A stretch of DNA of 64,000 bases from Aplysia californica. Its lineage: Eukaryota. Position 1 is the stretch's first letter. Each line of letters opens with the position of its first letter. A model generated the notes under the pieces. That model ran no database searches. It saw only the letters and a program-made list of their open reading frames with translations, and was not told the DNA's origin. The translations under genes were made by a program, and so were the position numbers. This document shows, piece by piece, positions 18,614 to 63,983 of the stretch. The DNA lies in the NCBI RefSeq assembly GCF_000002075.1, contig NW_004797368.1, forward strand, positions 1,017,240 to 1,081,239, written 5' to 3'.

Positions 18614-21600
18614 TTACTTCTTCTTGGCCACACCAACGGTTCTTCCTCTACGTCCAGTGGTCTTGGTGTGTTGACCTCTCACACGCAGACTGAAAAAAAA
18701 AAGCACAAGACAATGTACTACATCAGTAAAAAGCCAATTTTACATCTCAAGTGCCAACTTGCAAAGCTTCCATATATCAAATCAAAACAAATATAAGCCA
18801 AATATACCACGAAAACAGGAAAGAAATTTTCTAACTAAAGAGAGAGAAAGGAGAGAGTGAAACCATCAGCAGAGGAAACATCTTCAAAGGCCTGTTTAGA
18901 AATTGGTAATAATGCAACAATTAGTCTAACTAAGAGCAAACAGATGTGTGCAAAAGCATGTTGTCTCCATCCGAATCAACAAGCCAAGTAGCGACCTGAT
19001 GGTGTAAAGGAAGACATTTACTGTAGCTGTCTTGATTATGGCATTGACCTGTACAGACAATGCTTTACATGCAGAGACAGCATGACATTTAAGAAACGTT
19101 CCCAACACCTGAATATTCGAGAATATACAGACAGAATAGGATTGTAACAAGTAAGCTTAAGAGACATACAAAATATAAATGTAACATGATCTGGTGGCAC
19201 CAGGCTCTCATTAATTTTTGGTCACACAGGGTTATCGGCAGCACCTCAAAGCCTGTTCATTTTCATGGCATTTAGTTTTAGTAAGACTTTTACGGCACTT
19301 GCAATACAATAAGGTCATACAGCAGAACTCTGATTCAACGAGGTCGCCGGGCCTGACCTAAAATCTCATTGAATCGGAGTGTTCGTTATAGCAAACATGA
19401 GGCTTTGAGTCAATAATTAAGGGCATTGAGCAAGTAATGTATAAAGAGAAGTCACAAGTAGTGCCTGGAAGGCCTGCATATTATGAGATAAACAAACAAA
19501 CAAACCCAATTCGTTCAAATGAACACGCCTGTACAATCTCGATTGTTTACCAAAAAGTTGTGTTGCTGTGTAGAGCCTAGCGTACGGCAACTCTTGATTC
19601 CATAGACCAGCGCACAATTCATGATGTAGATCTACGCAAAGACTAGCTTATCATTGTAATAATGATCAGTTGCAGAGGGAAAAAAACAATAAACCGACAC
19701 GTTTGTATCTGTAACGTTTAACGCCCTGACGGCTAGTGCCCCCCCCACCCACAAGTGTGCAGGCCGCCCCATCCGACCCCAACACAAGCCAGAGTAGACG
19801 TGTGCGTGTGCCAACAACGCATGAGTTGGTATGAAAAAAAAAAGGCCCCTGATTGGTCGCATGCAATCAGTTAAGTGAATAATGTTTCACGATGCAGGTA
19901 TAATGGATGGTTTCCGGGTATAAATAAAGTTTGTTCTGGAAGTAACATGAGCGAAGCCACGTCTGCAGGGGCTGTTCACCCTGGAAAGGACCTTTATTGA
20001 ACCCGAGCTTGCTAATTTCAGTGTTCGTTGAATCCGCGATATTTTTGTATATATATATATTATTTTTAAAAATAAAAAATATGGGGGAATCTATCTCATC
20101 AAATGTCCCACTGTGTAAGTGTCGAAGATAAGAGGTTACAAGAGAGTAACAAACATAAAAAAGGAGGAGGAGAGATCAGGACGATAGATGTTTGATATGA
20201 AGGAGCAAACCACACCCGAGCACCCGAAACTATTTATACGTCACAGACAGGAAACCTCTTCAAAGGGCTGTTTAGAAATTGGGAAAAGGCAACGATTATT
20301 CTAAGACTACTAAGAGCAAACAGATGTGTACAAAAACGTGTTGTCTCCATCCGAATCAACAAGCCAAGAAGCGACCTGATGGTGTAAAGGAAGACATTTA
20401 CTGTAGCTGTCTTGATTATGGCATTGACCTGTACAGACAATGCTTCACATGCAGAGACAGCATGACATTTAAAAAACGATCCCAACATCTCAACATTCGA
20501 GAATATACTGACAGAATGGGATTGTAACAAGTAAGCTCAAGGGACATACGAAATATAAAGGGGGCACAATGTAGTGGAACCAGGTTCTCGTTGATTTTTG
20601 GAACTATCTCAAAGCCTGTCAATTTGCCTTGCTTTTAGTTTTAGTAAGAGTACAACGGCACTCGAAACACAATAAGGTCATATAAGTGCTGAAGACTTGA
20701 GGAGTTACAAGAGAGTAATAAACATAAAAAAGGAGAGACCAGGACGATAGATATTTGATAGAAAAGGAGCAAATCACACCAGAGCACCCGCCAACCACCC
20801 ACGCCTCGCTTTTGAAGAAAAAATTTTCTTTTAAAAACGTAATAAGTCGATATATTTACGACAGAAGCATGTGAGGGTAGCCTAGTTTCAGAGACAAAAT
20901 GGCAGCCAAAGTTCGGTAACTCCCATACCCAGAGAGTCCCTGAAAACTGCCCCCCCCCCCCCCCGCAAGTGATTGCAGGCAGGTATGGGTGTAATGAGTT
21001 AAGGAATGTAAGTTGTCACAGGATCCTCAGTGCAGACTTGAAACCACACCAAGAGTTTTAAACAAAGTTAGTTTCTGTAGCCCTTGATAAAAAAAAACCA
21101 CAAAGACAATGTATAATGCCAGTGTGGTTGTGAGCCAGGCTGGAGAAGGAAGCAATTGCATTTATAATAGTATTAGTATACAGTCAAGATTTTACCACCA
21201 GAAAGACAACTATACCCCTTACAAACTGCTCCACTTAAAAAAAAAAAAAAAAAAAGCATGTTTCTAAACAATGTATCTCATCAGTTCACAAGACATGATG
21301 TCAGACCTTTGCAACCCAAGTATCAAATATAACATCAAGTGGTGACTGCGCATTACATTTTCATTCATCTCACAAAACACAACCGAATCCCCCGAACAAC
21401 AGAATGATAAATCTTACCCCCAGTAATGACGCAGACCCCTATGGGCACGGATTTTCTTCAAACGCTCCAAATCCTCACGGAGCTTGTTGTCCAGACTGTT
21501 ACTCAGGACCTGGCTGAAGCGGCCATCCTTGATGTCCTTCTGTCTGTTGAGGAACCAGTCAGGGATCTTGTACTGGCGGGGGTTGGTCATCACAGTGATG

Positions 21601-24600
21601 ATCCTCTCCACCTATCCATACAGGGGAGAAAAAAAAGTGATAGAGCAAAATCCAAACCTTGAGGAAAACACTGAAAATGGACAGGCAAAACCTTCAGGAG
21701 ACTAACAAGAACAAATCAACATGAGCTTTCAAAAGCCCATAGTAGTACGTAGTGAATCTATCCCCATATTGACCTTTACATCCAAATAGATATTCACGAT
21801 CGCTTGCAACTACGCGGTGGCCATTCATGCAGCGAACACCCCCCCATATGGAAATTTTGCGGGAAAAGGGAAAGAGAGGCTGCATACTATAAAGAATGTT
21901 TACAGACCCGCACTTATGCTGTGCTGATCGTGTCAATCACTATGCAGTATTTGATTGGCACGATCTCCTGTTCTGTCTCACATTGTCTTACAAAAACTAG
22001 TTATTCCACTGGTCATTTTTTTGCACCCTTAGCAACTGAAATATGACAGATCACCACAAGGAGTCACTCAAAAGCTTGAAGCCCCCTGTTCCAACTTGCA
22101 TCTCACAACAAACGTTAATTGGGGGGGGGGAAAGAAAGAGAAACACAAACAGCAACAACAGTAGTTTTACCACATTCTTACCTCCTCTTCACTCAGTTCA
22201 CCAGCCCTTTTTGTGGTATCCACATTGGCCTTTTTGCAGACAACGAAGGCAAATCTGCGACCAACACCCTGCGAAATTAACCGAAAAAATTATTGGCAAA
22301 AATATTTCCTCACAGAAAAAAAGAAAAGAAAAAGAATACATTGATTAAATTTTTGGAACCCAAAAACCTAGTATGTACCATACCGCCAGTATTGGACCAA
22401 CAGAACCCAAAACCTATTTTTATAAAGTAGAAGTTTTACAGGGCTCGCAACTGCATAAGGTCATATGAGCGCCAAGGGGTGGATGTCAACAGACAAGTCC
22501 CTACAGGGAATAATACTCTGCTCACCTCTCTAGCTTCAACAGCACAAAGTCTGCTTCGACTATCAAGGCACCATGGAAATAACAGTTCACAAGAGTGTGA
22601 CAAATATGAGCATGACATTGATGAATCAGCCCATTTATTATTCTATTGTGCATAAGAACTTGTTAATGTCCCCCCTTTGGAAATGCCCTAAAGACACTTC
22701 GGTAAGTAGCACCACCGAGAGTGAGTGTGTGTGTGTATAACACAGATCATTCTGTTAAACAAGATAATGTACCATAACCATAAAATGTATTTCCAATATC
22801 TGTAGTATACTGGGGTAATCTTGATAAAGTTGAACCAGTATGGTGTTAGCAGAGACAGATAATCACTTAACCTGACAAAAGGTCATTTCCTATGTTCTGG
22901 AAGTCAAAAAATGACCATTTTTACGTCACAAAGTGTCACTGAAAACATGACACGTCTATCTAGGCTACACATTTATCACAGGAAAAAATTTAAAACAAAC
23001 CACTCTACATATGAAATAACTTTGGTTTGTTTTTTTTTTCAAAAATGCTATAAAAGCATTATAATGTTGAAGGGCATTTACATTCCCCAATCTAACAAAG
23101 CTAATCAAGCTCAGAATATTATGGACAGAAACAAATCACACAAGCAGGGGATCAAAACTGCACCAATTTCTCTCTTGTGGTATGCATACTTGCCAGCACC
23201 AGTGAATTTTAACACATTACACCCCAACTCGCCCGTGAATTTCCTTTTATGCGCTCCACCCTAACTCGCCCGCGCCAACATAGCGCCGTTACAAACGAAG
23301 TCTCGCCATGACGAGACTCTAAGGCCGAGATTTTGATACGCAGTTATTGCAAAATGTTTTTTCTTCCGTTTGATACTGAAATGTTCGAGCCAGTTTTTAG
23401 TATCAGAGCCGATCGAAGAGAGATTGCGTTCCCGACTCTTCGAAGGTGTTGACTTGTTGAAAATTGACACAACTGAGTTTTAAAAAGGAAATAACTATGG
23501 GTTTGAGCAAAAATAAGCATATGACAAAAATGAATCAGATTTTGGTGAAAACATTTTAGCAAGAGTATGGGGCGCTTCAGATTGATTAGACATAAATTGT
23601 AGATCTAGGTCCTAACCGCGAGGCTGAGCGTGATGGGTCCGACCCCCCGATTGAACTAAGAACATTTTCCAACAGTTTGTGCATACATAAAGTTATATTT
23701 TTCTGATACTACATTCATTTTTCTTTGTGACTTATTTTTTCAGGATTTTTTTGAATTTAGTATTTCTAAAATGTGGATTTTAAACACTTATGGGTTCCTT
23801 TCCCTTGCTTAGGATCAAACAATGGGCTTCCCGTCCAGACCCTTAGGGTGTAATGTGTTAAAACCTTTTTTTTAATAGGACATGCTTTGTACACATTGGT
23901 ACATCTTGTGTGCATAATCATGACGGACTAGATATTCCAATACGGCATCAAATGAGTTTAAATAAAAATAAAAGATAAACCGTACAGCGCATAGAGAGCT
24001 TCGTGTTGAGTGGGAATGTGTAAAATACAAATCATAATTTATCAAATAAAAAGGCTGCGGTTATTCGTACAATAGTCAGACCAACCGTAGTTAGTTGTCC
24101 GTACAATAGTGCGAACAACTGTATTTAGTTGTCCGAACAATTGTGCTGTGCGAATAACTAGTTATCCGTACAATTATTCGAATTGGTTGTTGGTGAGCTT
24201 ACATATTTTGCCTAGATCTAGTTGTAGGTTCTAGTGGTGGGCAAGGACTTACATTTTGAAGAACTAGACAAGCGGGTTAACCATTTATTGAAAACTGGTT
24301 CTGACTTGGACCTGACTTAGATTTGAGCGCCCCCCCCCATCTATGTATACACCGCCTCGCCTCCGCCCCACATCTGCTAAATACGTAACCTAATTTGGGT
24401 CTAGATCTTGCAGAGAGACTTGGATTTGGCTGAGCCAGCCTCCTCATCTCACAACACTGCTCTTCCACCTCGCCACTTCTTTCTGCGTTATCCTCTCCCA
24501 ACCGCACTTCGTCCACTAGGAAAGTGGGCAGAGTTCTATCCAGATTACAATCCCGTAAACTTAAATAGGTTAAGCCACAGGCAGGAACTGGATACCCAAC

Positions 24601-24902
24601 TTATAATCCGGGTTTCCGCAAAGCACTAGAGGTTCGTTCGCAACTGTGACCGGTCAGTGAACATGCTCGCATCATAACTTAACCACCACTTTATCAAAAT
24701 TTAAATCAGCACTTAAAACGCATGTTTCAGTCCAGCTTCAATCTGTAATTTCCGACATTCCCAATACAAATATTATTAGTTCTCTCAGTATCGTTTATTC
24801 ATGCTGTTCTGTTCTGCAAGAATTTATGACTGTGTGAATTCATTAATGAGAGCGAGGGTGTCTGGGTTAACTTTGTGGGATTGTCTTTACTCAAGGATGT
24901 AC

Positions 24903-24941
<39 letters not shown>

Positions 24942-26754
24942 GTTTACTATAGGAGCTGTGCGCTTCATATGTTCTTTGTATTATTGTACAGCGCATTGAG
25001 CACTTCTTTGTGGAAATGCGCTATATAAATGCAATTTATTACTATTTTATTATTATTATAAGATAGATGGGCCCTACGCCAGACCCCGGCATTATGTGAG
25101 CACCGCTGCTGTTGGGGTCCCAAAAGTTCATGCAAAGTCTGCAAGTCGCGAAGTATGGCACCCCGGAATGAGGGGGAATTATTGATTTAAAAAAAAATAA
25201 TACACACTTATGGGAGAGAGGGTGTGTGTGTTATGAAAACACCCTGTCTCAGCTGCCTGAAATCTCATCAAAACTTCAGTCAGACACTGCTCAGCTTGAT
25301 CGAGTCGGTTTGGCGCCCAGTGCCCATTGAGCATGACCAATCCCACCCAAAATATCGCTTTTCCGGTTTTGACAAAACTCGCTGTTTCGTGCAAATAGGC
25401 CTCAGCCTAGGCTGTGCGAGTTAAGTATTGTACGGATAACTAAAGGCAGTTATTCGTACAACAATATTGTACGGATAACCAGTTTTCCGCACAATGGTAC
25501 GAATAACCATTACGAATAAAAATGTTCAGCATTGCCAATCCATAGCCATAACTTAAGATAAATTTTGAAAACTTGAACAGTACTCACCCTGATGGATGTG
25601 ATGGCGAAGGGAATCTTCCTTCTACCATCAATATTCGTGTTCATCACACGAAGAATGTGTTGAAACTTCTCAGGCAAAACGAGAGACTGAAAAACCAAAA
25701 CCAAACCAATTAGGAAAGGGGTTTATAAAAATATAGATCTAAGATCTAGAGATAGAGAGAAGACATATAACAAATCAATATAACTTGCTCCAGATGTAGA
25801 TCTTGATTCTGAAGGCTCAAAGTTACTCAAACTTCAATGATTCAATGTCTATTTTTCATTTGAATCTGCCACAACAGACCAGATCCTCATGTCCCTTGGT
25901 TACTTAAATCCTTAATATTTATGTAGCGTCAATTGCCACAGAGAAGGCCTAAATTGGAGCCCTTGCCTTTTGCGTTGGTGAGTAGGCCTACGAGTGCTCG
26001 GTGTTCTGCGTTTGTGAACTGCTTACGCACACCTCTCTGTCCCTCTAGTGTGTGTGTCTCTCTCTCTCCCAAACTCCCGTCCCCCAGGGGCCTGATTTAT
26101 GTTCCCCGATATAAATAAGTCTATTTCAGCACCTCGTCTTCTGTCCGGTCCTGTATCAGGCCGGCACCTGGCTCAGCGCATGTGCGCCACATCATCCATG
26201 CGATGACCAGGTCAACTGGGGCATGAGAGAGTTGCTAGCACCCCCCCCTCTCTTACACACTCTAGATCTACGGGGTCTGGGTGCTGAAACTTTCCGAAAT
26301 CACAAAAGATTTCTCTCCCCCCCCCCCAACTCTCTCTCACACTCACACTACTACTAAGACTACTGTGTCTGGGCGCTGAAACATTCCAAAATCACGAAAG
26401 ATTTCCCCTACACTACCGGGTCGTCTGTATACTTCGTGACTTTGTTCCCGGGTCTGTGTAGAATCTAGATCTACACTTCGATTTGCCTTTCTCACAATAA
26501 TCAATCCAAACTGTCTCAGGACATCATTCACAGTTCACCTCTCTAAACTAAACAGACTAATGGAAAATGCACTTTCATGACCAAAACAAAACTGGCCATT
26601 TATTCAATCGAAAGAATACATGAAATCATCAAAAGTCATAAATATTGGACCCTTCGTACACAACAATATACTAGAACAAAATACCCAAAATGTACCCATA
26701 ATTGCAGGATTAATTGCGATATTAAACAAGGACTTATAGTTAGGTACCCACCAT
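18614..26754 (-). CDS. RPS18: 40S ribosomal protein S18 (uS13), complete, 5 coding exons
   Basis: Exons (minus): 26752-26754 (ATG), 25588-25686 ([33 protein letters not shown]), 22182-22268 ([29 protein letters not shown]), 21418-21611 ([26 protein letters not shown]...HRGLRHYWG), 18614-18689 ([24 protein letters not shown]). All introns GT-AG with consistent phases; total 152 aa, as in known RPS18. Confidence 0.98.
18956..19085 (-). ncRNA. Box H/ACA snoRNA candidate, copy A, in RPS18 intron 4
   Basis: Minus strand reads hairpin 1 (GCTGTCT...AGACAGC, upper stem GCATTG/CAATGC), H box ACAGTA, hairpin 2 (TGTCTTC...GGAGACA), then ACA plus 3 nt. About 130 nt, sense to a ribosomal-protein host gene. 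Confidence 0.75.
20336..20465 (-). ncRNA. Box H/ACA snoRNA candidate, copy B, in RPS18 intron 4
   Basis: Near-identical core to 18956-19085 (offset 1380 bp). Same stems, H box and ACA box; flanks are more diverged than the core. Confidence 0.75.
23213..23857. mobile_element. piggyBac-like MITE in RPS18 intron 2
   Basis: TTAA|CACATTACACCC ... GGGTGTAATGTG|TTAA. Confidence 0.6.
24059..25508. mobile_element. Non-autonomous TIR element with subterminal repeats in RPS18 intron 2
   Basis: GGTTATTCGTAC and GTACGAATAACC ends, with clustered GTTATCCGTACAA-like repeats at both ends. Confidence 0.55.
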
Positions 26755-27158
26755 TTTGATGCCTACTTTGGAAAAGGAAGTTGATTTGGAGGAGGAAGCG
26801 GAAGTAGGTAAAATACCTGGATCAGGAGTAAGCCAAGACCCTGTCCTTGCCGATATTTTTTTTTTCAATGAATAGAAATAACCCATTAGCGTAATATTTG
26901 ATATGAAATATTCAACAATAAAATTTTTATGCTACAAGATCAGTGATATAATAACTTAAAGTAGATTGCCAAAAAATAAAATATCTAAATATATCTAATA
27001 AAAGAAATCCATTCCGATTAATGAATTTCCTTAGCCTACGTTATTAATTTCCAACCGAAAAGAGCACTCTCCTAAAAATTTTAGGAAGTGATGACAGAAG
27101 AAGTGAAAGAAATTGAAAGTGGAAGATTAAGAATATAGCCTAAGGTGAAGTGTCAACG
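26755..27158. promoter_or_regulatory. Bidirectional promoter between RPS18 and VPS52, including the RPS18 5'TOP/TCT start
   Basis: Minus strand from 26780 reads CTTCCTTTTCC (polypyrimidine initiator) about 26 nt before the RPS18 ATG. ETS-type GCGGAAGT at about 26798 and further GGAAGT motifs. The two start codons diverge about 400 bp apart. Confidence 0.8.
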
Positions 27159-52600: not shown

Positions 52601-55600
52601 GTTCCCACAGCGGAAGGAACAGCTCATTTTTCTCATCAACAACTACGACATGATGCTCAGCGTGCTGGTGGTGAGGCTTCGCTCTGACTTTTTGCCCTTG
52701 CATACTGGTTTATTGTAGACTGGGTTCTTCTCAAATTGGTTCTTCATTGAACTGGTTTGTCAGACACTGGTTCATTATAAAATTGGTTTGTTACACACTG
52801 GTTCATCCGGTTTGTTACACTCCTGTCCATCATAACTTGGTTTGTCACTCACTGGTTTATTTTGAATTGGTTTTTCACATACTGGTTCATCATTATACTG
52901 GTTTGTCACTCACTGGTTCGTTTTATAAATTGTTTTGTCACGCACTTGTTTGTCACACACTGGTTTATCATAAACTGGTTTATGAAAAACTTGTTGATCA
53001 TAAACTGGTTTGTCACATACTGGTTTATCATAGACTGGTTTGTGGAATACTGGTTCTTTATAAACTGATTTGTCTCAGACTGCTTCATCATTGAACTGGT
53101 TTGTTACACACTGGTTCATCCGGTTTATCAAGCACTAATTCATTATAAGTTGGATTGTCTCAAACTGGTTCATCATAAGCTGGTTTGTCACACACTGCTT
53201 CATTATAAACTAATTTGTCATAAAATGATTTGTCACAAGAACGCTGGTTCATTATAAACTGGTTTAGTGCACACTGGTTCATCATGAACTGGTTTATCTC
53301 ACTCTGATTCATCTGAAACTGGTTTTTCATAAAAAACTGGTCCATTGCAAACTGGTTTGTCGCACACTGGTTCATCATAAACTGGTTTTTGGAAATCTGG
53401 TTCATCATGAATTGGTTTGTCACACACTGGTTTATCCTAAATTGGTTTGTCACACACTGGTTCATCCTAAATTGGTTTTTCATAAAAACTGGTCCATTGT
53501 AAACTGGTTTGTCGCACACTGGTTCATCGTAAACTGGTTTTTGGAACACTGGTTCATCACAAGCCGCTTTGGCACACATTGGTTTGTCTTATTTAATCTG
53601 TGTCATCGTTATTAATTATGTTCACTGTCAACTTCACACCATTTTATTGATTTGCCTGAAGTTACCAAAAAATGATTTAGCTCTTCAGACTATGACAGAT
53701 TTTGTACTTTGTATTTTGTACATAATATGGCTGTATGGTTGTTCTATTATTTTGTGTATATTTTTTGTGTTATGTCAGGAGCGGACATCGGACGACTCAA
53801 AAGAGGCTGAGATGTACCGGGACCTTCTGGCTGCCCGCACGCAGGAGTTTGTGGAAGAAATCCTGGCCCCTCACTTTGGCGGGCTTGTCACATTTGTCAA
53901 GGACGCCGAGGTCTGTCTGGAGAGAGGTCAGAGTGACAGACTGCAGCAGGAAGAGAGTAAGTAGTAGACTCCCAAAGCTGGATTGATTTGGAGGGGGGGG
54001 AGGGGTTGTTCAATTCAATGATTTTTTTCTTTAAACTTATTTTTGTATTGCCTGTGGTATTGGATTTTTATTTGTTAGTTTGTCAGGTTGTATGTTTTAT
54101 TTGGGGGGGGGGGTTGTTACATGTCATACTGTATAAGACGACGCCCGTCCAAACTGGCAACTTTTCTCCACTATAATGGATGGTTGTCTAAGAAAGTTTC
54201 CAACTGTAGTTCCAAGCTCGTGCCCGCCCAGTCCCAAGCGACTGCCAGCACATTTGGAACAGGCTCTGACATTTCCAGGGCAGGTGGAACCGACAGACAG
54301 AACTTTAAAAATTCGCATATATAAGCGGGACAGAATCGGCTACCTGTTGACAAGTCTACGCCTTTGACTTGGGGCTCATACGATCATCCAGCCCAGTGCA
54401 TTTCAAGGCGGATACTAGAAACTAACAGGACATGGGGTCTAGGAAGCAACGGGTTTAATTAACGCCCTCCTCATTATCGCTATTTGGTTATTTATGAGGT
54501 GGAACCTCCGAATTTAATGTCCGTCTCCGATGGGACCGAGCCAAATAAGTTGAAAGTTTTGAAAAGTTCACAAAACAGCCCAAATTCAAGGACACCCAGT
54601 CTGGAATTCGAACCATGGCCATCCCCTCTATAGTCCAGCATGGAAGGGGGCCTAAATTATACACCTTAAAACAGCCTTGAAAAGCAAACTGTAATTTTAA
54701 TGGTTAAATTGTTGCACACTAATCGACACTATTTAGATTACTTAGGAGGCATCTTCGACCTGCCTGTCAGAACCAACTCGAACGGGCTGAGCGGGATACA
54801 ACGTCCCAGCAGAAAGTGAATGAATAAAATATGTACTCGATAAAAAGTCTCCATACAGGAATCAAACTTTTAACTAACACTGACCGGTTGAAACACTGGG
54901 TATTATTTGTTCTGTTTGTTTTTTTGTTTTGTTTTGTTTTTTGTTGTTTTTTTAAGGGGGGGGGGTGTTCCTGGTTAAGCCTTTTTACGGCACTTGCAAC
55001 ACAATTAGGTCATATATTATAAGTGCCGAAGCTTAGTAAAAAGCACCAAAAAAAAAAAAACACAAAAAAGTAGTAGGAAAGATAAGGACGATAGATGTTT
55101 GATAAGAAAAAAGGAGCAAACCACGCCAAAGCACCCGCCAACCACACATCTCAAAACNNNNNNNNNNNNNNNNNNNNNNNNNNNNNNNNNNNNNNNNNNN
55201 NNNNNNNNNNNNNNNNNNNNNNNNNNNNNNNNNNNNNNNNNNNNNNNNNNNNNNNNNTTGTGTGAGTATGAGAAGAGGCCTGGTATCTCAACTTATTCAA
55301 TTTTTGTTTTATTGATGAATTTAGACTAAGACTCGTTAAGATCTATTGTAATATTTTCATTTTTCTTGTCTTTGTTGTTTTTAATATGGTAAAGAAAAAT
55401 AAAAGTTGGCCTATATAATGTGGATTTTCTAGGAAAAAAATCATTGTACAAAAAATACAGACCTGGCTGATGGTGTTTAAAAGTATTTGTTCCCTCTATG
55501 GTCATTTGATGTAATTTATGATAACAAACTGGAGCTGATGATGTGAGTTTATATTTCTCCCTGTGTCTCTGTCCACAGAGCGAGTGCAGCAGATCGTGCG

Positions 55601-56474
55601 TGGATTCAACTCAGACTGGAAGCGGGCGCTAGAGAGTATCAACCAGGAGGTCATGAGGGCCTTCACAAACTTCAAGAACGGCACTCAGATTTTACAGGTA
55701 CACTTTACCTTTGAGACTTTGGTGTTGTTTGAGAAAGTCTTGCTGTGTTGGAAGGGGGTTGGGGTTTTTTTTAGGCGGGGGGGAGATGGGGGGATGAAAT
55801 AGCATAATAGCATGTTTTTCTTGTGTGTTTTCTTCTTCTTTTTGCCCTCAGTTTTTTCCTGTCTGTTTGTCTTGCCTTTTCTGCAACACAAAAGTACCAT
55901 TGTGATATGAGTTGGTGTGCTGTGCTTCCCTTTACTTACATTATTACTATTCCTGGATTATTTCTTTCCCTAGAAATCAAATTTCTTTTATTGAGAACTG
56001 AACAACAAAGATATATTATACCTGATGTACTGAGGAATGGCATAGTGTACAAAATTAACTACTTACCTTGCCTATATGGAGGCTACTCATTTTACTTATC
56101 GCTGTTGTTTTTATTCTGGTAAAGAAAAATAAAATTGGGCTTCTGCCACTGTAATGCGGATTTCCTTAAAGAAAAGATCGTTATTTTTTGTATAGAAAAT
56201 ACAGACCTGATGACGTATTATTAGTATTAAAGCATTTGTTCCCTCTTTAGTCATTATTATAACAAAGTGGAGCTGGTGTGTTACATGTCATCGTGACTTA
56301 TCCTTGTTGTATTTTTATTGTTTTCAGGGGGCCTTGACCCTGCTGATCCAGTACTACCACCGCTTCCAGAAGATTCTGTCTCAGCCGGTGTTCCGGAATC
56401 TGCAGATCAAGCATGAGCTCATCAACATCCACCATGTGATGGTGGAAGTGAAGAAGTACAAGCCGACTTTCTGA
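27159..56474 (+). CDS. VPS52: Vacuolar protein sorting-associated protein 52 (GARP/EARP subunit), complete, 19 coding exons, about 702 aa
   Basis: Exons: 27159-27194 (MADLVDTPVSTD, least certain), 33384-33459, 34516-34568, 35185-35260, 35542-35609, 36798-36911, 37917-37978, 38435-38585, 39395-39495, 40399-40531, 49213-49270, 49712-49845, 50818-50973, 51256-51374, 51830-51953, 52467-52670, 53779-53956, 55579-55697, 56328-56474. Sum 2109 nt. Motifs GVDLRQYSKEIE, RMEQMLNGFQGDLSSISTEI, DDLMGVEDTAKKGFFS, LIFLINNYDMML and ELINIHHVMVEVKKYKPTF* match VPS52. Confidence 0.96.
27221..27932. mobile_element. MITE with GG...CC TIRs, 8-bp target-site duplication and internal telomere-like repeats, interrupted by a second element
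   Basis: GGGAGGACTTCCGTAACGATCGACCAC and GTGGTCGCTCGTTACGGAAGTCCTTCC ends; flanks ATTTACCC and TTTTACCC. The same terminus with CCTAACCCTAACCC recurs at 60181-60255. Confidence 0.7.
27361..27855 (+). mobile_element. About 490-bp non-autonomous element nested in the MITE above
   Basis: Begins GGCCACCTCTATTCTCACCC and ends GGGTGAGAATAGCCACTTTC. It is the reverse complement of 9764-10249 and has subterminal inverted repeats and (GA)n tracts. Confidence 0.8.
28893..30359 (+). mobile_element. Ginger-like DNA transposon derivative with Ulp1-protease and PHD-finger remnants
   Basis: About 125-bp imperfect TIRs with TGT...ACA ends, flanked by TATA on both sides. Internal decayed frame QQ..DCGAFAVAF...HLRRCIE and YCVCRCPDDGNLMLKCD*CSL*FHAKCVG...WLCSRC. 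Confidence 0.75.
30369..32740 (+). mobile_element. TIR DNA transposon relic, possibly Sola1-like
   Basis: 30-bp TIR CGATGCCCCCGTGATCAGACCTCGTAAGTG, flanked by ATAT, with subterminal CTCGTAAG repeats. A stop-interrupted plus frame near 31300-31380 reads IEDFFAKLSKLGSHYC*KQSRK, resembling an SHYxR transposase motif. Superfamily assignment is tentative. Confidence 0.65.
35261..35541 (+). other. U12-type (minor spliceosome) GT-AG intron, VPS52 intron 4
   Basis: 5' splice site GTATCCTTT. Branch site TCCTTGAC about 10 nt before the AG, with no polypyrimidine tract. Splicing restores QD-Y-IKESQNIASLH. Confidence 0.9.
40030..40420 (+). repeat. 34-bp tandem array of the VPS52 exon 10 splice acceptor plus exon start
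   Basis: Unit TTTTTGTCTCAG|AATCTTCAA(TGAG/CAAA)TTCCTGATG, with AG ends at 40090, 40125, 40159, 40192, 40228, 40262, 40296, 40330, 40364 and 40398. Confidence 0.92.
41411..41589. mobile_element. Tc1/pogo-type MITE
   Basis: TA|CAGTGGAAC ... CTTCTACTG|TA, imperfectly palindromic body. Confidence 0.55.
45155..45445 (+). repeat. Tandem pair of a dispersed ~150-bp repeat
   Basis: CACATG(C/T)TCATCTCTGCTAACAATGAGTGG...GGAGGGCATCACTGAT occurs twice. Related GGTTGGAGGG...CTTTACTCAAAC copies near 35860, 36590, 37560, 48550 and 61385. Confidence 0.65.
46255..46315. repeat. (GT)n microsatellite
   Basis: About 30 perfect GT units. Other simple repeats: (GA)n at 1-60 and 24905-24936, (CA)n at 7520-7552, CT-rich 47040-47380, GA-rich 49880-50230. 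Confidence 0.95.
49271..49711 (+). other. U12-type intron with AT-AA termini, VPS52 intron 11
   Basis: 5' splice site ATATCCTTG. Branch site CCTTGAC with A at 49700. The phase-1 junction AKK-G-FFS requires the intron to end ...CTCAA|GC at 49711. Confidence 0.8.
52710..53590. repeat. Degenerate minisatellite (about 15/30-bp unit ACTGGTTCATCATAAACTGGTTTGTCACAC) in VPS52 intron 16
   Basis: ACTGGTT recurs roughly every 15 nt over about 900 bp. Confidence 0.9.
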
Positions 56475-58779
56475 GCCGTCGATTGCTTGTCTGTCTTGTT
56501 TTAAGTTCTGACGTACAGTCAAGTCCACATGAACTAAACACTTTTAACCCCAAAACAACAGTAAAACAAATTTTCAAAAGAAAGAAAAATCCCTCAATTT
56601 TATTTCTCTTTTTTCTTCTTGAACAACTTTTCTAAATGAAAACACAGCTAAACCAAAGAAAATGCAGTGGTCCCACAGTTTTCAGTTGAAGCAGACTCCA
56701 CTGTATATTTATTGTCAGTGTAGTAAGAGCAATGAGAAACTTTATGGTTTCTAATTAATCATCCTGAAAAGCTAGGTAGGGAAGTAACCCTTTTTTTTTC
56801 ATGACAGTTGTGATTTGTGGGCTTGTTTATATAGCTCTGGCCTACTTGATCAGGCAGCACTGCCTGACAAAAACTTTTGGGGCTTTAAACATTTTGCTTC
56901 TGGTGTTTTGAGAATAGTGTAGTACATCGGGCCCATGTTGGTGCATGAAAGGAATGTAACGTAGGACCGAATTCTTGGTCTGTGATGGCTCACAGTTGGA
57001 GAAAAATCTTACATCTCTTTGTCTCCAGGTATTATTCTGGCCCGTCCATGGCTAACTTTGGAAGGGGAGAGTGCCTTTATTTTTGTTTAGGGCTTTTAGT
57101 CCGTCATCAGTTTTTGAATGTTCATGCATTATGCTGTCAAAATATCTGCTTTGAACAAATCCTTCAGGACATCTGTTTCAAAAATAAATCAATGTCTTGG
57201 TTTGATCTGGCAGAATTATTTTTTTCAGGCCATTCTCACAGACCACTAGATTTCAGAATCTAAAGAGTCAAATTTCAACAAAAAATTACCCATTGAATTT
57301 GTAGAGTTGGAAGTGCTACTACTACATGTATTACTAGTGTCAGAGGTGGTGGTGATTTTAGGCTTAAAGTCGAAATTCAAAATTGATGACAGGTCACTTT
57401 GAGATTTTGCACAATCAAGAGTTTGGTGGTTTTTCTCATGTACATGAGAAGTTAGTACTGACCTTCCCATTGACTTTATGTAGATGGGTTTTTTTTTACA
57501 TTAGGAGCTATAAGCATTATCCTCACGATGACTTCTTTGGATCCATTCTTTAATTAATTATACAATGGATCTTTAGTCAATGCATCTTGAAATTTAGAGC
57601 CTGGCATGGCGAATTTTGTGAGCAACAGTCAAGAATGTTCAGTCACAGAAACCTTACCTCTGTCGGAACTACAATAGATCTAGATCTAGTCCCTTCAAAT
57701 AGAACTACACATAATACCAAAATGGCTTCCCATATCTGCAGCAAGAGTAATGGGTCCAGCAAACAATGAAAGCCATGATAGGAAAACAGTCAGGACCCTC
57801 ACTTTATGAACAGCGCCAGTGATTCTCAGTGTTTTCTACTTTTACTTGATTTTTTTTTTAATGGTTTCTCTTGAGCTGAAATTTTTGTATGAAGAAATGT
57901 TTGCCTTTCTGTCGCGATCCCCTCTCTCATCACAAGTGAGTTTTACACCCCGTTTCCATCTGTGGGTGGGTGTGGGATGGTGAGTTGCTCAAAGACCTCT
58001 CCAAACACAACCATGTGTCTTATAGAACCAACAGAATGCTGCATTGAAACTGCTCTCGAAGTATGTTGAATGCTTTTACAATTTACAGTCAAGAAATACT
58101 TGAATGCGACATATACATGAAGTGGGGGGGATGTGCCGAATGAAAGTATCTTGTGGATACCTATTTATATATAATAAAAATAATATGATATACAGATTCT
58201 CTCTCTACTGTGGTGGCAGGGCTCGGTAATGTTGCAACACTGTGAACATGTATGAGATGATTGCGTGAATGCTTATAAATGATTGTTGGTTTTTTTTTCA
58301 GTGTATCTGTCACGTGCAAATGCTGTGGAAGAAAGCTCAGAAATCTCCTACTACTTGCTTTTTGTTTTCCATGTGCAATATGTATATATATATGATTCTA
58401 TCAAGAGTACGATGTTGTTTGAAAGTCAAAGGTTTCTGTTGAGAGATAAAACTTGCTGTGTGTTTGTAAAGACATTCTGCGACCGAATGTTTGTGATAAC
58501 TTTCTCAGTCCAACGTGTTGGTGATGACCAAGTGTATTCATTCCTCAACATTGTGATATGATGGGTTTTGTGTTTGCGACGTCCCAGGTTGATGTAGATG
58601 GTTTGTGAAACATAGGGGAATTTGCCACCAAAGTTTTTTAAATTTGATTTGTATATATTATGTGTACGGTGAATCTTCTCTTCTGCTAACTCAAGATTTG
58701 AAGTGTTTGCCAGTCACACAAAGAGGTATATGCTATGGAAGTGTAAATCTGTGCTGATGTGAGAATATATATGTTTTCA

Positions 58780-58785
58780 AATAAA
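58780..58785 (+). terminator. Candidate distal VPS52 polyadenylation signal
   Basis: AATAAA followed by a GT/T-rich downstream stretch. Other AATAAA hexamers occur earlier (about 57183 and 58173), so the site actually used is uncertain. Confidence 0.4.
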
Positions 58786-59360
58786 ATATAAAATTATTAA
58801 TACATTGCCTCGTTAACTTCATTACCTTTGAAATGTTTGTGTGTTTACATATCTGTCTTACGTCATTCAATTAATCTGCAGCCAGATGGATTGTGCTCTG
58901 TCGTCATTTTTAAAAGTTTTTGGAGGGTTGGGGTTTTCTTTGTAGTTTTACATGGGAACCTAAAAAACTGAATATTCTTATCAAGAAAAAATACTCTTTG
59001 CAAAATCCCAAATCAATATTTTTAGAATACACTTTTGATAATGACTTCCTTATTATCTTTAAAGCAAGAGTTGTTTTCTTGGTAACAACATTCAGTTTTT
59101 TGGCTCTCCTGCAAAATGGTAAAAACTGCATAAATACTGTACTTTAAAAAAAATGACAGCAGTGCTGGCGACACAATAACTCAGTCCACAACCATCATAA
59201 GAAGCAAAGCAACCAGTCTAGCTGAAGAATGTCACCTTCACAGGAGCTGATCAGTTGTTTTAAACTTACCAGTTACCAATACAGAAAGAAAATACTATTA
59301 CTAATAACTAAACTGCTGAAGAAATAAAAACCATCACGAGTACATTAGACATGATAATAG

Positions 59361-59366
59361 TTTATT
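59361..59366 (-). terminator. WDR46 polyadenylation signal AATAAA
   Basis: Plus-strand TTTATT about 50 nt past the WDR46 stop codon. Confidence 0.6.
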
Positions 59367-59415
59367 ATTGCATTTATATCAATTCTTGACCCAACCCAAC
59401 CCAAAACATTTCACT

Positions 59416-62400
59416 TTAAACAATCTTCTTCTTGAATCTGTCTAGAGCGGATGCCTTCTCTCCTTTCCTCTTTGCGTTCTGGGCATCAAACTTGCCCTCC
59501 GCCTGCTTGGCTCGAACAATCTCCCTGACCTTAGCCCTCATGTTCTCCTCCTGAACACCCTTCAGACGCTTCTGCACCTTGGATGCCTTGCTGCCTCCCT
59601 TCATCTTGTGGCGCGGCGTGAAGTCAATTTTGTCTGGCTTCAGGTACTGTAGAAATAAACAGTGAATGATTTAGTCAGGATCATTTCTATCATCAGTTGG
59701 CAATTTAGAATTTGAGTTGAAAGCAGATTCCCTGTGTGATGCCAGGCAAGATGATTGAGATTGGTGGAAATACCTGGCTGATGGTTGACGAGCACAACTC
59801 TTGGATCCTACTTCTTTTCTCTTCCTCTGTTTACCTTGTTTTTACTTTTTTTCCCTGCACTAATTGGACATTATTTGTAAATGTACTCTGCACTCAAATT
59901 TTAAAAAAATGTTCAGGGAATAGAGTAGAGAGCAGTCAATATGTGGCACTGGCCAGCCTCTAATAGCTTGTAACAAGAAATCAATGGAAGAAAACTCAAA
60001 AATGTCACCTAAGGTTGAGCACTTATGCCAAAAGCACCTCTCCTTCACTGATATAAGTACACGCGACATCTCTCTTTCATTAGTTTATATATTTAGACCT
60101 GCATGTGAGCCTCAACCAGATTGTCTGAAAATTTTGCGCAACCCCCCCCCCCCCATAAAGAGCTTTTGTGGGTGTCATAAGGAAGGACTTCCGAGTAACG
60201 AGCGACCACCCCAACAAACACAATAAAGAAGAGACCTAACCCTAACCCTAGGCCTACCCCCAAAAAAACCTGCAACGGGCCTCATGTAAAAAGGCCAGCA
60301 CAAGTCCAAAATGAAAAATTTTTTTAAATTTAAAAACCACACTCCAAAACAAACAAGGAGCAAAATAAGGCCTAGATTCTACATCTAAATTGCTATAATT
60401 GCCAATTATTGGGTTTGATACAATAACACAATAGAATTGGAATATGAATCCTCCATATAGATCTAGTAATCTAAATAAATCTAGATCTAGATCTTGTACA
60501 ACAAATGAATAGGAATAGGTCTTGAACTAGAAATCCGCATCCGATTCCGAACAGAGGTACTCAGCTGAGTCTAAATTCTGAATAAATAAATAATTCACGC
60601 ACCTGATGAAATGCTTTTTACCAACATTAATATTACAGCACAACCTATGATAGAGTTTGACACAATAGAATTGGAATTTGAATCCTCCATTGAGGTCTCT
60701 ATAATGATCTATATAGATCTAGATTCTATTAGAACAAGTGAGTCGGACTTGAATGAATCCACACGATCTGAACAATTGAATTAGTCAACAAATGAAATTC
60801 AAAATGCCCCTCGTGCACGAAATTGAAAGTAGATAATTTAGGTTGTCGTCCTTTTTTGTATTCGCATTTCTACTCAGGTTCCGATAATTATGTCAGAAAC
60901 GCCGACGTCGGCACGAAACGAAAGTGCCGACAAAGCCGACGGGAGAAAAAGGGGATGCTAGCAGTCGGCCAGGCCTCACACTACGCACATTGACTGATAC
61001 AGGTGGGCCTAGCGATAGCATCGGCCGGCTCGCGGGTCGGGTCGCGATTGTCGGATTTCAGACGATTGTCGGCAAACATGCAGGTCTATATATTCACTGG
61101 TTTATAACAAGTCAACATGATGTGAAGCCCATATATATCTCCTTCACTAAGACACTCTGTTACCACGGGAGGCTTACCTTCTTCTTGTTCCTCTCCTCTT
61201 GAAGTTCTTTTGCTGTTTGTAAGTCCACTTTTCCAATTTCACTGTCCAGTGTGATCATCTCAGGATGGACCTGGGACATGAGACAAACACAGAAGTTGAA
61301 AGTATGTTATGACAGACAAAAATGTCCAATCCCAGTTTTTTGTCAAACAGACATGGTTTACAGTATTCTGAGATTCAAGGCAGGTGGTTGGAGGGTATCA
61401 CTGGTAGGTCCGACTTGTATTTCCTGTCTGTATATCTTGTTTTTCCTTACACAAATTGCTTTTGCTGTGTGGACGTGCTTCTCTTTACTCAAACTAAACA
61501 GATTTAGGTGGTGTTACAATACAATAGCCATCACTGATGAATTTCTAAATAGACTGTTGGCAACATAGATCACTACAAGCAAAGATTTATCAAGTCTTGT
61601 CTAGAGTGATCATGTGACCCACCAATGTCCAATCAAAGCTATCTGGACAAAAAGTACCCTGGTGCAATTAATGACTTACCATGCAAGAGTAGTGAGCATT
61701 CTATATTTTTTCCAAAAGTCAATACCCAGTGGTTTTAAATTATTGAATGGAATAAATCATTACAGGAAACAAATGTTTGCTTGTGTTTTAGTTGGTAACA
61801 CAGTGTATTTGTATATAATATTTATGCACGACTCTGCGTTGAGTGTTCATTCTTCATTATATTTTGTGGGTTTGTCCATGAAGGTATCCAGTGTGTTGTC
61901 TTTAAAAGCGTGTACATTGTACAGTGTTTGCTGATGAATGTGTGATGCATGTTCATTCACAACTGCAGCGTGTTTGTTCATCAATATGTGTTGTGTGTTT
62001 CTACATGAATGTATGTTGAGTATTTATCCGCGAATATGAGTTTGTTTGTCTGTTCATCATCAATGATCAATACATACCTTATCCAGCAACATGCGGACTT
62101 CTGTCTGTTTCCTCTGAGCCTTGGACTGGAATGGGTTAGCCTCCAGGGCATCATAGTTGGCCTCTCCGGCACCTGGAAGAGAGACAAATCAGAGTTACAT
62201 TCCCACACATGAAACAGACACACAGGAAAATGTACAACACATAAGTCTACATATCTCCCTCTCTGCACAAATACTGTATTCATCCCGGTTTGGTCCTAAA
62301 GGCAGGGTTGGGAGCCCACCTCCTAAATGATCTAAACTGTGTCAATGGGGGAGTAAAAACACCTACATTTTTTTTAAATACATGTGATGGCACAAGTACA

Positions 62401-63983
62401 CCCTTCTCATCATTCTCAAAATCATTACTGATAACAACACTTGTTGCCAATCTCCTGACATTTTTAAGTATTCGATATTTCATGTGACATCTCCATCTTG
62501 TCTAGATAACAAGTTACCAGGGTTTATGCAACACAGAGCAATAATTTGTCTTGAAAAAATAAGGAACTATCCACGCCTGCAACTACAGGTGGATTATTTT
62601 GAGCCTTCGTGTGCATTAACATCATGACGAAATTGTGTTTATGTGTGTCTTCACTTTCCACAACACAAGCTGACTCACAAAGCCCACTAGTTCTATCTAA
62701 GACCAGCGTCTGTGGTGTAGTGGTAAGGTGCTTCGCTGTCGCACATAGGAGACCTGAGTTTGATTCCTGGGGAGAAATGTTTTATCCAAAATCTCGGTCT
62801 TTCTGCCAGGATGCTTCTTCTATCTCAGCCACAGTTGGCCCTTGAAGGCAGGATCGGACGCCAACATCCTAAATGATCTAAATTGTGTCCATGGAGGCAC
62901 AAAAACACCTACATTTTTAAAAAAAAGGTTATATCTCTGCCCATACCTGGCACAACAATGCTGGAGAAACCCCAGCTATGGCCCAAGCCCAGCACGTCCT
63001 CGTAGGGGCAGAAGGCCACGTCTGTGATGAGTCTCTCGCACCGGTGGTAGAGGTACGGCTTCTCCGGCCGCTCCGACAGTGTGGCCATGTCTCGGTACAA
63101 CTGAGGGCACAATGGGAAAAACCAAGAAAAAAGTATGAGAGACATGCTGCTATTTGAATTGAAGACTCGGTGGCTAACAAAATTACTTTTTTTTGTAGCA
63201 AATGGAAACAAATTGATGTTTCCTTTAGGGATAAATTAATTTTTCAATATTGGGGAAAAATGGTGGGAGTGGAAAGGGAAATCAAATTCATAACAATATG
63301 TATCCTTTTGGGAGAAAATGCAGAACAGTACAACTTACAGCAAGGAAAACCTCCATGGCTGGTCACAAGACAAAATAACTAAAAAGGCCTAGTTTGTATT
63401 GAGTACTTAGTTAATCAGTGCCAGCCAAACAACAACCAAAAAAAAAAGAAAAAAAGATGGTGATGGATTGGACACACACTTAGGAAGCCAGCTCAAAATC
63501 TGACAAGACAAACCCAAAGATGGAATTCCCAAAGGGAGGAGGAAGAGAGGAAGACCAAGATCCTTCCGGAAGCCACACCTGGAGGCAGCTCTCAGACATA
63601 TGGGACACAGCTAGCTGGAGGTGGAGAAGATCATCCAGAACAGAGACAGGTGGAAAGTTCTTCTTAGTGGCCTATACCCAATACCAGGATGAAAGAGGCG
63701 AATGATGATGATGAGTTAATAGAGGACATAATAGAAAGTCCTGACCTCCACTGGCCTATATCAGAATAAAAGAGGCAGACGACGATGAGTTAATTGTTAA
63801 AGTACACAATAGCAAGCCTTTACCTCCACTACGTTATCCCGACTGACGGCCAGGAGACCCTTCTGACTGAAGTCCAGCAGGCCCGGGCACTGTTTCCTAT
63901 TGTACTGGTAGCGACTCAGCTCTCGGTACATGCGCAGGTCAAACACCTTCAGACGTCTGTCCATGCTTGTGGTGGCCATGAAC
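59416..63983 (-). CDS. WDR46: WD repeat-containing protein 46 (UTP7/BING4), last five exons; the 5' part lies beyond the window
   Basis: Exons (minus): 63824-63983 ([19 protein letters not shown]...[12 protein letters not shown]), 62947-63100 (...[22 protein letters not shown]), 62078-62172 ([32 protein letters not shown]), 61178-61270 (VHPEMITLD...), 59416-59646 (...[11 protein letters not shown]). BING4CT domain signature and C-terminal SALDRF motif. Confidence 0.95.
60094..61088. mobile_element. TIR element in the last WDR46 intron
   Basis: TAGACCTGCATGT and ACATGCAGGTCTA ends with a TATATT direct repeat on both sides, and internal GCCGAC/GTCGGC repeats. Confidence 0.55.
62700..62912 (+). 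mobile_element. Second tRNA-derived SINE family
   Basis: TGTGGTGTAGTGGTAAGG...GGAGACCTGAGTTTGATTCC head. Related copy at about 48278-48490 and tail fragment at about 62285-62368. Confidence 0.6.

What the first reader, a model, noticed from the sequence alone, without database searches (positions are those of the whole stretch)
18614..63983. RPS18-VPS52-WDR46 micro-synteny: a piece of the vertebrate extended MHC class II region in an invertebrate
Seen: RPS18(-) and VPS52(+) are head-to-head, and WDR46(-) follows immediately. Established: human 6p21.3 has VPS52 and RPS18 head-to-head followed by B3GALT4, WDR46 and PFDN6. Here the same three genes are adjacent, but the RPS18/VPS52 pair is flipped relative to WDR46 and no B3GALT4 is visible. 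Inference: an ancient bilaterian proto-MHC linkage kept at single-gene resolution. It predicts PFDN6 head-to-head with WDR46 just right of the window, and possibly other extended-MHC genes nearby.
Basis: partly seen in the sequence, partly recalled or inferred. Interest (0 to 1): 0.8.

Follow-up and report, generated by a model that had tools for sequence, protein, structure and literature searches.

The report
Sea-hare RPS18–VPS52–WDR46 gene neighbourhood
In the sea hare Aplysia californica, RPS18 and VPS52 sit back to back on a shared 400-base promoter, a pairing kept across bilaterian animals, while the third neighbour, WDR46, is shared only with one other snail here, so it is weak evidence for an ancient "proto-MHC" block.

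Summary
The window is Aplysia californica scaffold DNA. It carries RPS18 (-, 18614-~26783), VPS52 (+, coding 27159-56474, 19 exons) and the 3' half of WDR46 (-, from 59416, running about 7 kb past the window). The N gap at 55158-55257 lies inside a VPS52 intron. The flanking exons join in frame and no coding sequence is missing.

- The divergent RPS18|VPS52 pair has start codons 404 bp apart.
- The same pair occurs in eight other bilaterian invertebrates (seven molluscs and an annelid at 72-307 bp, 2.1 kb in the annelid; a hemichordate at 361 bp) and in mammals.
- It is absent from the one coral and one sponge examined.
- It looks like a constrained bidirectional-promoter pair.
- WDR46 lies tail-to-tail after VPS52 only in Aplysia and Biomphalaria.
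- WDR46 is not within 10 kb of VPS52 in six other bilaterian loci.

PFDN6 is on another scaffold, and there is no B3GALT gene on this 1.6 Mb scaffold.

A DDAH gene flanks the pair in an annelid and a chiton (human DDAH2 is an MHC class III gene). That hints at a loose ancestral neighbourhood rather than a block preserved gene by gene.

The parts
18614..26783 (-). RPS18 (ribosomal protein uS13/eS18), 5 exons: 18614-~18692 (with the stop codon), ~21413-21611, ~22174-22276, 25587-25686, and 26752-~26783 (ATG only, plus a short 5'UTR)
   Evidence: Pfam S13 hits. PDB 40S S18 at E 1e-36. Exons are conserved with Biomphalaria, Plakobranchus and Pomacea. The exon 1/exon 2 splice joint 25686|26752 is seen in RNA. 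The 5' end is inferred from the conserved ACTTCCTTTTCC initiator 16 nt upstream of the ATG.
26755..27158 (.). Shared divergent (bidirectional) promoter interval between the RPS18 ATG and the VPS52 ATG (404 bp). It holds a TCT/TOP-type initiator for RPS18 at 26770-26782, an ETS-core CGGAAG at 26799, and a second TCT-like motif at about 27056-27066.
   Evidence: Read from the sequence. Function as a promoter is inferred, not assayed.
27159..56474 (+). VPS52 (GARP/EARP subunit), 19 coding exons. The first is 27159-27194, the second 33384-33458, the last ~56325-56474. There are large introns at 27195-33383 and 40532-49209.
   Evidence: Pfam Vps52_CC and Vps52_C. NCBI Aplysia protein P0194 maps with 699/702 residues identical.
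55158..55257 (.). Assembly gap (N) inside VPS52 intron 17, between exon 17 (53779-53956) and exon 18 (55579-55697)
   Evidence: The flanking exons are consecutive and in phase in P0194. The gap was not filled.
56475..59415 (.). Convergent (tail-to-tail) spacer between VPS52 and WDR46, 2.9 kb, with no further gene recognised
   Evidence: No long ORF and no Pfam or Rfam hit here. The equivalent spacer in Biomphalaria is 1.75 kb.
59416..64000 (-). WDR46 (UTP7/BING4), 3' part. Window exons: 59416-59670 (with the stop codon), ~61169-61273, ~62075-62176, ~62945-63109, ~63821-63985. Eight more exons follow to the right, up to about scaffold C98:1,088,483 (L001 ~7244).
   Evidence: BING4CT hits. PDB human WDR46 and Utp7. 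Exon-by-exon collinearity with the Biomphalaria BING4CT gene.

Best explanation
The window holds three ordinary housekeeping genes of Aplysia californica.

The RPS18|VPS52 pair. The two genes are transcribed divergently from one compact promoter interval of 404 bp between their start codons. This arrangement is an ancient, selectively kept unit. A breakpoint between the genes would cut a shared promoter, so rearrangements can only move or flip the pair as a whole.

The flanks. They have been reshuffled freely.
- WDR46 came to lie tail-to-tail behind VPS52 no later than the common ancestor of Aplysia and Biomphalaria (heterobranch gastropods).
- The likeness to the vertebrate order (WDR46, B3GALT4, RPS18, VPS52) probably reflects, at most, descent of these genes from one ancestral chromosome neighbourhood.
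- It does not reflect an unbroken three-gene block.

Shown here: gene identities, orientation, spacing, conservation of the pair, and absence of PFDN6 and B3GALT.
Inferred: promoter sharing as the constraint, and the age and origin of the WDR46 adjacency.
For: The pair is conserved. RPS18(-)|VPS52(+) occurs in every bilaterian locus fetched. ATG-to-ATG distances:
- Aplysia 404 bp, Biomphalaria 307, Plakobranchus 271, Pomacea 79, Haliotis 77, Pecten 116, Liolophura 72, Glandiceps 361 and Capitella 2141 (loci; RPS18 exon check).
- Bat gene ends lie 47 bp apart (PMC5437515).

Promoter elements.
- The RPS18-strand motif ACTTCCTTTTCC lies at the same distance from the ATG, starting about 27 and ending 15-16 nt upstream, in a mollusc-to-annelid range of species. 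A variant occurs in the hemichordate.
- An ETS-core CGGAAG/CTTCCG occurs in the interval in all 5 gastropods. Its background rate in these loci is one per 2.6-22 kb.
- RNA confirms the RPS18 exon 1/2 joint. One RNA contig runs upstream to 27055, about 100 bp from the VPS52 ATG.

General rule. Conserved ancestral microsyntenic pairs are mostly 5'-5' with short spacers (PMC3514665).

Flanks vary.
- WDR46 is adjacent only in Aplysia and Biomphalaria.
- It is absent within 10 kb in seven other bilaterians.
- DDAH sits on opposite sides of the pair in Capitella and Liolophura. This shows the pair flipping as a unit.
- PFDN6 is elsewhere.
Against: - Only 10 kb on each side of VPS52 could be seen in other species. 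WDR46 could lie just beyond that in several of them, which would favour an older neighbourhood.
- Vertebrates also have WDR46 two genes from the pair, with its 3' end facing it. One inversion of the pair relates the two layouts.
- Promoter sharing and co-expression were not measured.
- RNA depth over RPS18 was almost nil, probably because conserved reads are filtered out. No transcription start site was mapped.
- Absence of the pair outside Bilateria rests on one coral and one sponge.
Confidence: 0.65

Rival explanations
1. One reading: RPS18-VPS52-WDR46 is a urbilaterian proto-MHC block kept at single-gene resolution. One inversion of the pair separates the heterobranch and vertebrate layouts, and the other lineages lost the block secondarily.
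For: - All three genes are neighbours in Aplysia and Biomphalaria. They lie within four genes of each other in mammals, and in both cases the WDR46 3' end faces the pair.
- DDAH, whose human counterpart DDAH2 is an MHC class III gene, abuts the pair in an annelid and a chiton. This suggests that MHC-region orthologues were close together early on.
Against: - WDR46 is not within 10 kb in Pomacea, Haliotis, Pecten, Liolophura, Capitella, Glandiceps or even Plakobranchus. That needs five or more independent losses, against two gains.
- PFDN6, WDR46's head-to-head partner in vertebrates, is on another scaffold.
- No B3GALT gene is on the scaffold.
- A recent amphioxus study finds proto-MHC genes scattered along a chromosome, with compaction later in vertebrates (PMC13012124).
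- Post hoc caveat (my inference): among about 20,000 adjacent gene pairs in a genome, a few are expected to be near neighbours in human by chance, and more if both lie on the same ancestral chromosome.
Confidence: 0.2
2. The WDR46 adjacency is pure chance. WDR46 was unlinked to the pair in the mollusc ancestor and was brought next to it by a random rearrangement in heterobranchs. The likeness to the MHC is coincidence.
For: - The adjacency is restricted to two heterobranchs.
- Side and partners differ from vertebrates.
- No further MHC-region orthologue was detected on the 1.6 Mb scaffold.
Against: - Two independent juxtapositions of the same gene with the same pair, in heterobranchs and in vertebrates, are unlikely unless the genes were already on one chromosome.
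- The DDAH neighbours point the same way.
- This rival cannot be told apart from the best explanation without chromosome maps.
Confidence: 0.13
3. Assembly artefact: the three genes were joined wrongly in a fragmented scaffold that contains gaps.
For: The scaffold has N gaps, one of them inside VPS52 (55158-55257) and several more to the left of RPS18.
Against: - Exons on both sides of the gap are consecutive and in phase in the annotated protein.
- There is no gap between RPS18 and VPS52, or between VPS52 and WDR46.
- An independent chromosome-level Biomphalaria assembly has the same order.
Confidence: 0.02

Closest known systems
Vertebrate extended MHC class II segment: PFDN6 / WDR46 / B3GALT4 / RPS18 / VPS52 / RING1 (bat and human order, PMC5437515; human gene list PMC1309616)
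   Same: - The same three orthologues lie close together.
- RPS18 and VPS52 are head-to-head with a very short spacer.
- The WDR46 3' end points towards the pair.
   Different: - In Aplysia, WDR46 lies on the VPS52 side, so the pair is flipped.
- No B3GALT4-like gene lies between them or anywhere on the scaffold.
- PFDN6 is not next to WDR46.
- No RING1, RXR, DAXX or BRD2 was found nearby.
Conserved ancestral microsyntenic pairs with bidirectional promoters (Irimia et al. 2012, PMC3514665; for example HSPE1-HSPD1)
   Same: - Two unrelated housekeeping genes in conserved 5'-5' orientation.
- The spacer is far under 1 kb.
- The pair is kept across phyla while its surroundings are shuffled.
   Different: - I found no paper in the searchable library that names RPS18-VPS52 as such a pair outside vertebrates.
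- Co-expression was not tested here.
- The pair was not found in the coral or the sponge examined.
Proto-MHC regions described in amphioxus and other invertebrates (PMC13012124 and works cited there)
   Same: Orthologues of human MHC-region genes are linked in an invertebrate. DDAH next to the pair in an annelid and a chiton adds a class III counterpart.
   Different: Proto-MHC is a chromosome-scale linkage, and amphioxus shows the genes dispersed along a chromosome. Here only a two-gene unit is conserved. The third gene is conserved only within heterobranch snails.

Membership tests
RPS18 / uS13 (cytosolic) | Ribosomal_S13 domain, with eukaryotic 40S S18 as the nearest solved relatives | tested here: met
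   PF00416 at 80.9 bits on one exon. PDB 40S S18 at E 1e-36. It is the only S13 hit in the genome.
VPS52 (GARP/EARP subunit) | Vps52_CC plus Vps52_C domains over a protein of about 700 aa, in single copy | tested here: met
   The NCBI Aplysia VPS52 protein maps onto the window with 699/702 residues identical. It is 62-89% identical to animal VPS52 proteins.
WDR46 / UTP7 / BING4 | WD40 propeller followed by the BING4CT (NUC141) domain | tested here: met
   BING4CT at 49.8 and 55.3 bits, the only hits in the genome. A WD exon hits human WDR46 (7mq8) and Utp7. The N-terminal exons lie outside the window.
Conserved bidirectional-promoter gene pair | 5'-5' orientation conserved across distant phyla | tested here: met
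   9 bilaterian invertebrates from 3 phyla, plus mammals.
Conserved bidirectional-promoter gene pair | Spacer under 1 kb | tested here: met
   ATG-to-ATG distance is 72-404 bp in 8 of 9 species. The Capitella annotation gives 2.1 kb.
Conserved bidirectional-promoter gene pair | Shared regulatory elements and co-expression | tested here: inconclusive
   A conserved TCT/TOP initiator and recurrent ETS-core motifs are present. No start sites were mapped and no expression correlation was measured. RNA depth was too low or was filtered.
Extended MHC class II / proto-MHC block | Same gene order and orientation as in vertebrates | tested here: not met
   The pair is flipped relative to WDR46. No B3GALT gene is present.
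Extended MHC class II / proto-MHC block | PFDN6 head-to-head with WDR46 | tested here: not met
   There are four prefoldin-beta loci and none is on C98. The PFDN6-type one is C1601:44504-44653. There is no gap in the 40 kb to the right of the window.
Extended MHC class II / proto-MHC block | Three-gene adjacency shared by distant invertebrates | tested here: not met
   It is shared only with Biomphalaria. It is absent within 10 kb in seven other bilaterians. Distances beyond 10 kb could not be seen.
Extended MHC class II / proto-MHC block | Further MHC-region orthologues nearby on the same scaffold | tested here: inconclusive
   The BET-domain gene (BRD2 type) is on C776. No Galactosyl_T hit is on C98. 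The RAWUL, Daxx and DDAH models hit nothing anywhere in the genome, so those searches are uninformative. One nuclear-receptor exon on C98, 536 kb away, looks NR5A-like rather than RXR-like.

The most novel reading that the evidence does not exclude
RPS18|VPS52, WDR46 and DDAH are remnants of a tight urbilaterian gene cluster. Its descendants became part of the vertebrate MHC framework: extended class II plus class III. Within it, the divergent pair behaves as an unbreakable cassette that has been inverted in place several times. If so, a core of the MHC framework predates vertebrates at near single-gene resolution.
Probability: 0.2. Interest if true: 0.55.

Novelty: new member of a known kind. 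Interest (0 to 1): 0.35.

Why it matters
This is a clean example of how gene order survives: a shared promoter locks two unrelated housekeeping genes together for more than half a billion years while everything around them is reshuffled.

For MHC evolution it sets a limit. The rest is lineage-specific or unresolved.

The record coordinates listed in the report make the remaining question directly testable: how far WDR46, PFDN6 and DDAH lie from the pair in chromosome-level invertebrate genomes.

Tried and rejected
- **Rfam scan of the window:** no RNA family, so no snoRNA was recognised in the RPS18 introns.
- **Failed look-ups:** Aplysia VPS52 (P0194) and Haliotis rufescens isoform X2 (P0171) returned nothing. 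The window's own genome is left out, and only the longest isoform of a gene is indexed.
- **Family searches of the genome:** DDAH_eukar, RAWUL, Daxx and DUF4487 hit nothing anywhere. These say nothing about absence, because the exons are short.
- **Supplementary pair lists of Irimia et al. 2012:** not held in the library.
- **Literature:** no paper in the library links RPS18, VPS52 and WDR46 outside vertebrates.
- **Full-length WDR46 or PFDN6 proteins of other species:** I could not obtain them. Single exons are too short for the length window of the word search. So WDR46 could not be placed on other species' chromosomes.
- I did not build or search a joined model. The only full-length proteins used were ones the tools returned.
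- **RNA reads:** depth over RPS18 exons was 0-2 reads, probably because conserved reads are removed as human-like. No start sites or expression levels were obtained.
- **Intronic duplicate in RPS18:** a 390-nt tandem duplicate was checked as a possible snoRNA host. It is not conserved in other gastropods, and its tail is a common dispersed repeat.
- **Earlier notes of this scan:** nothing relevant.
Full report
**Where the window comes from**

The window is G000:C98:1017240-1081239, in a genome of 927,310,431 bases in 4,332 contigs. Scaffold C98 is 1,635,546 bp long. [quoted passage not shown] Its longest contig is also 1,635,546 bp. P0194 maps onto the window with 699 of 702 residues identical. 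The three exceptions are codons split by introns. The sequence is therefore from the sea hare, a heterobranch gastropod, so the refutation 'it is a vertebrate' does not apply.

**The three genes**

*RPS18 (minus strand).* The Ribosomal_S13 model hits one place in the whole genome, window 21414-21611. Exons also score on Pfam and match 40S S18 in solved ribosomes at E 1e-36. The five exons are:
- 18614-~18692, which contains the stop codon
- ~21413-21611
- ~22174-22276
- 25587-25686
- a first exon that contributes only the ATG (26752-26754) and a short leader

The exon 1/exon 2 joint (25686|26752, GT..AG on the minus strand) is seen in an RNA-derived contig and in two raw RNA reads.

*VPS52 (plus strand).* It has 19 coding exons from the ATG at 27159 to the stop at 56472-56474.

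*WDR46 (minus strand).* It ends with a stop at 59416-59418. It carries the BING4CT domain at about 62.0-63.1 kb, the only hits in the genome. It continues for eight more exons into the next 7 kb to the right of the window. A WD exon there matches human WDR46 and yeast Utp7.

I searched these spliced genes exon by exon, by reference.

**The assembly gap**

N 55158-55257 lies inside VPS52 intron 17.
- Exon 17 ends at 53956, one base into a codon, followed by GTAAGT.
- Exon 18 starts at 55579, after an AG, and supplies the other two bases.
- The two exons are consecutive in P0194 and also in a sponge VPS52 used as a ruler.

No coding sequence is missing. Only the intron length is uncertain.

**The head-to-head pair**

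The two start codons are 404 bp apart. On the RPS18 strand, the pyrimidine initiator ACTTCCTTTTCC ends 16 nt upstream of the ATG. An ETS-core CGGAAG follows 45 nt from the ATG.

I fetched the VPS52 locus, with 10 kb on each side, from eleven other animals. RPS18(-)|VPS52(+) is present in every bilaterian among them:

| Species | Group | ATG-to-ATG distance |
|---|---|---|
| Biomphalaria glabrata | heterobranch gastropod | 307 bp |
| Plakobranchus ocellatus | heterobranch gastropod | 271 bp |
| Pomacea canaliculata | caenogastropod | 79 bp |
| Haliotis rubra | vetigastropod | 77 bp |
| Pecten maximus | bivalve | 116 bp |
| Liolophura sinensis | chiton | 72 bp |
| Capitella teleta | annelid | 2,141 bp as annotated |
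| Glandiceps talaboti | hemichordate | 361 bp |

RPS18 exon 4 was confirmed by tblastn in seven of the eight. In Pecten the gene runs off the end of the locus.

In a bat, the gene ends are 47 bp apart (PMC5437515).

The initiator motif sits at the same distance from the ATG (starting about 27 and ending 15-16 nt upstream) from molluscs to the annelid. A variant occurs in the hemichordate. The ETS core occurs in the interval in all five gastropods, against a background of one per 2.6-22 kb.

The coral Porites lutea has a Niban-like gene upstream of VPS52. The sponge Sycon ciliatum has acyl-CoA dehydrogenase and eIF3m genes around it. Neither has RPS18 within 10 kb.

This is the pattern described for conserved ancestral microsyntenic pairs: mostly 5'-5', with short spacers, explained by shared regulation (PMC3514665). 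That the promoter is truly shared is an inference. RNA depth over RPS18 was almost nil, most likely because conserved reads are filtered out, and no start site could be called.

**WDR46 and the prediction**

- In Biomphalaria, a BING4CT gene lies on the minus strand 1.75 kb after VPS52. It is collinear with the Aplysia gene exon by exon. The three-gene layout is therefore real and at least as old as the common ancestor of these two heterobranchs.
- No Aplysia WDR46 exon finds a match within 10 kb of VPS52 in Plakobranchus, Pomacea, Haliotis, Pecten, Liolophura, Capitella, Glandiceps, Porites or Sycon.
- Pomacea and Pecten have other, unrelated genes downstream of VPS52.
- In mammals, WDR46 lies on the RPS18 side, with B3GALT4 between them, and PFDN6 lies head-to-head with WDR46.
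- In Aplysia, the Prefoldin_2 model finds four loci and none is on C98. The one on C1601:44504-44653 matches only prefoldin subunit 6 among solved structures.
- There is no N in the 40 kb to the right of the window.
- The next gene to the right appears to lie on the minus strand. One of its exons gives only a weak DUF4487 hit, which the genome-wide search did not confirm.
- None of the 43 Galactosyl_T hits in the genome is on C98.

**How to read the likeness to the MHC**

Parsimony over the sampled species favours two gains of a WDR46 juxtaposition, one in heterobranchs and one in vertebrates. The alternative is one ancestral adjacency lost five or more times.

There is also a look-elsewhere effect (my inference). 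Among about 20,000 adjacent gene pairs, a few will be near neighbours in human by chance, and more if both genes descend from the same ancestral chromosome.

- One inversion of the RPS18|VPS52 unit converts the heterobranch layout into the vertebrate one.
- A DDAH gene abuts the pair in Capitella (after VPS52) and in Liolophura (after RPS18). Human DDAH2 is an MHC class III gene (PMC1309616).

Both fit a picture in which these genes were loosely neighbouring early in bilaterian history and the pair flipped in place more than once. A recent cephalochordate study likewise finds proto-MHC genes spread along one chromosome, with compaction later (PMC13012124).

With only 10 kb of flank visible per species, and a fragmented Aplysia assembly, I cannot measure how close WDR46 is to the pair elsewhere. 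That is the decisive missing datum.

**Other MHC-region genes on the scaffold**

- The BET-domain gene (BRD2 type) is on C776.
- The RAWUL, Daxx and DDAH models hit nothing in the genome, so those searches are uninformative.
- One nuclear-receptor zinc-finger exon lies on C98, 536 kb to the left of the window. Its best solved relatives are NR5A2 and SF-1 rather than RXR. With about 90 such hits in the genome, one on this scaffold is not surprising.

**Verdict**

The window shows a deeply conserved divergent gene pair plus a heterobranch-level third neighbour. It is not a demonstrated urbilaterian three-gene block. This is a new, well-documented member of a known kind of feature and is of moderate interest.

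Noticed in passing
window 30366-31053 (within VPS52 intron 1) and 30000-30367: Two dispersed repeat families. A 1.2 kb probe from here found more than 50 copies at 75-89% identity on many scaffolds.
   Followed up: no
window 18929-19319 and 20309-20682 (RPS18 intron 4): A tandem duplicate of about 390 nt (85-91% identical, 1,380 bp apart). It is not conserved in the RPS18 introns of Biomphalaria, Plakobranchus or Pomacea. Its last ~50 nt belong to a common dispersed repeat. No Rfam family matches.
   Followed up: yes
window 27056-27066 and 26752-27055: A second TCT-like motif (CTCTTTTCG on the RPS18 strand) lies about 95 bp from the VPS52 ATG. One spliced RNA contig carrying RPS18 exons 1-2 runs upstream exactly to 27055. 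This could be a distal RPS18 start site at the spacing seen in other molluscs, or a chimeric contig end.
   Followed up: partly
G000:C1601:42289-48059 (L020 2289-8059, + strand): The Aplysia PFDN6 gene lies on a separate 73 kb scaffold. Just after its first recognisable exon there is a run of tandem copies of an exon-like piece (SENTLVKEVSQDS...).
   Followed up: partly
L025 15251-22149 (Capitella teleta) and L015 1-1250 (Liolophura sinensis): A DDAH gene is the direct neighbour of the RPS18|VPS52 pair in an annelid and a chiton, on opposite sides of the pair. The DDAH_eukar model found nothing in the Aplysia assembly.
   Followed up: partly
L002 8623 to L003 8893 (C98 about 1,099,860-1,110,130, minus strand): A row of minus-strand ORFs that read like exons of one gene to the right of WDR46. 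One exon gives a weak DUF4487 (C1orf112/FIRRM-type) hit at E 9e-4, below the cut-off. The genome-wide search did not confirm it.
   Followed up: partly
G000:C98:481494-481634 (L027 4495-4635, + strand): A nuclear-receptor second-zinc-finger exon. Its best solved relatives are NR5A2/SF-1, then NR4A, NR6A, RAR and RXR. It lies in a stretch with unusually long open frames in several frames and on both strands.
   Followed up: partly
window 15262-15917: The ORFs read like remnants of a mariner-type transposase. This is by eye only and was not tested.
   Followed up: no
window 26214-26361 and 27324-27600: Short stretches with RNA-seq cover on both strands. Many reads fit only partly, and loose ends show CA-repeats and poly-A. 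They behave like transcribed dispersed repeats rather than exons.
   Followed up: no
window 1-18600 and L007-L009 (30 kb to the left): No convincing gene within 18 kb to the left of RPS18. This side of the scaffold is rich in N gaps (5-6 kb of N per 10 kb in L007-L008, about 4 kb in L009).
   Followed up: partly
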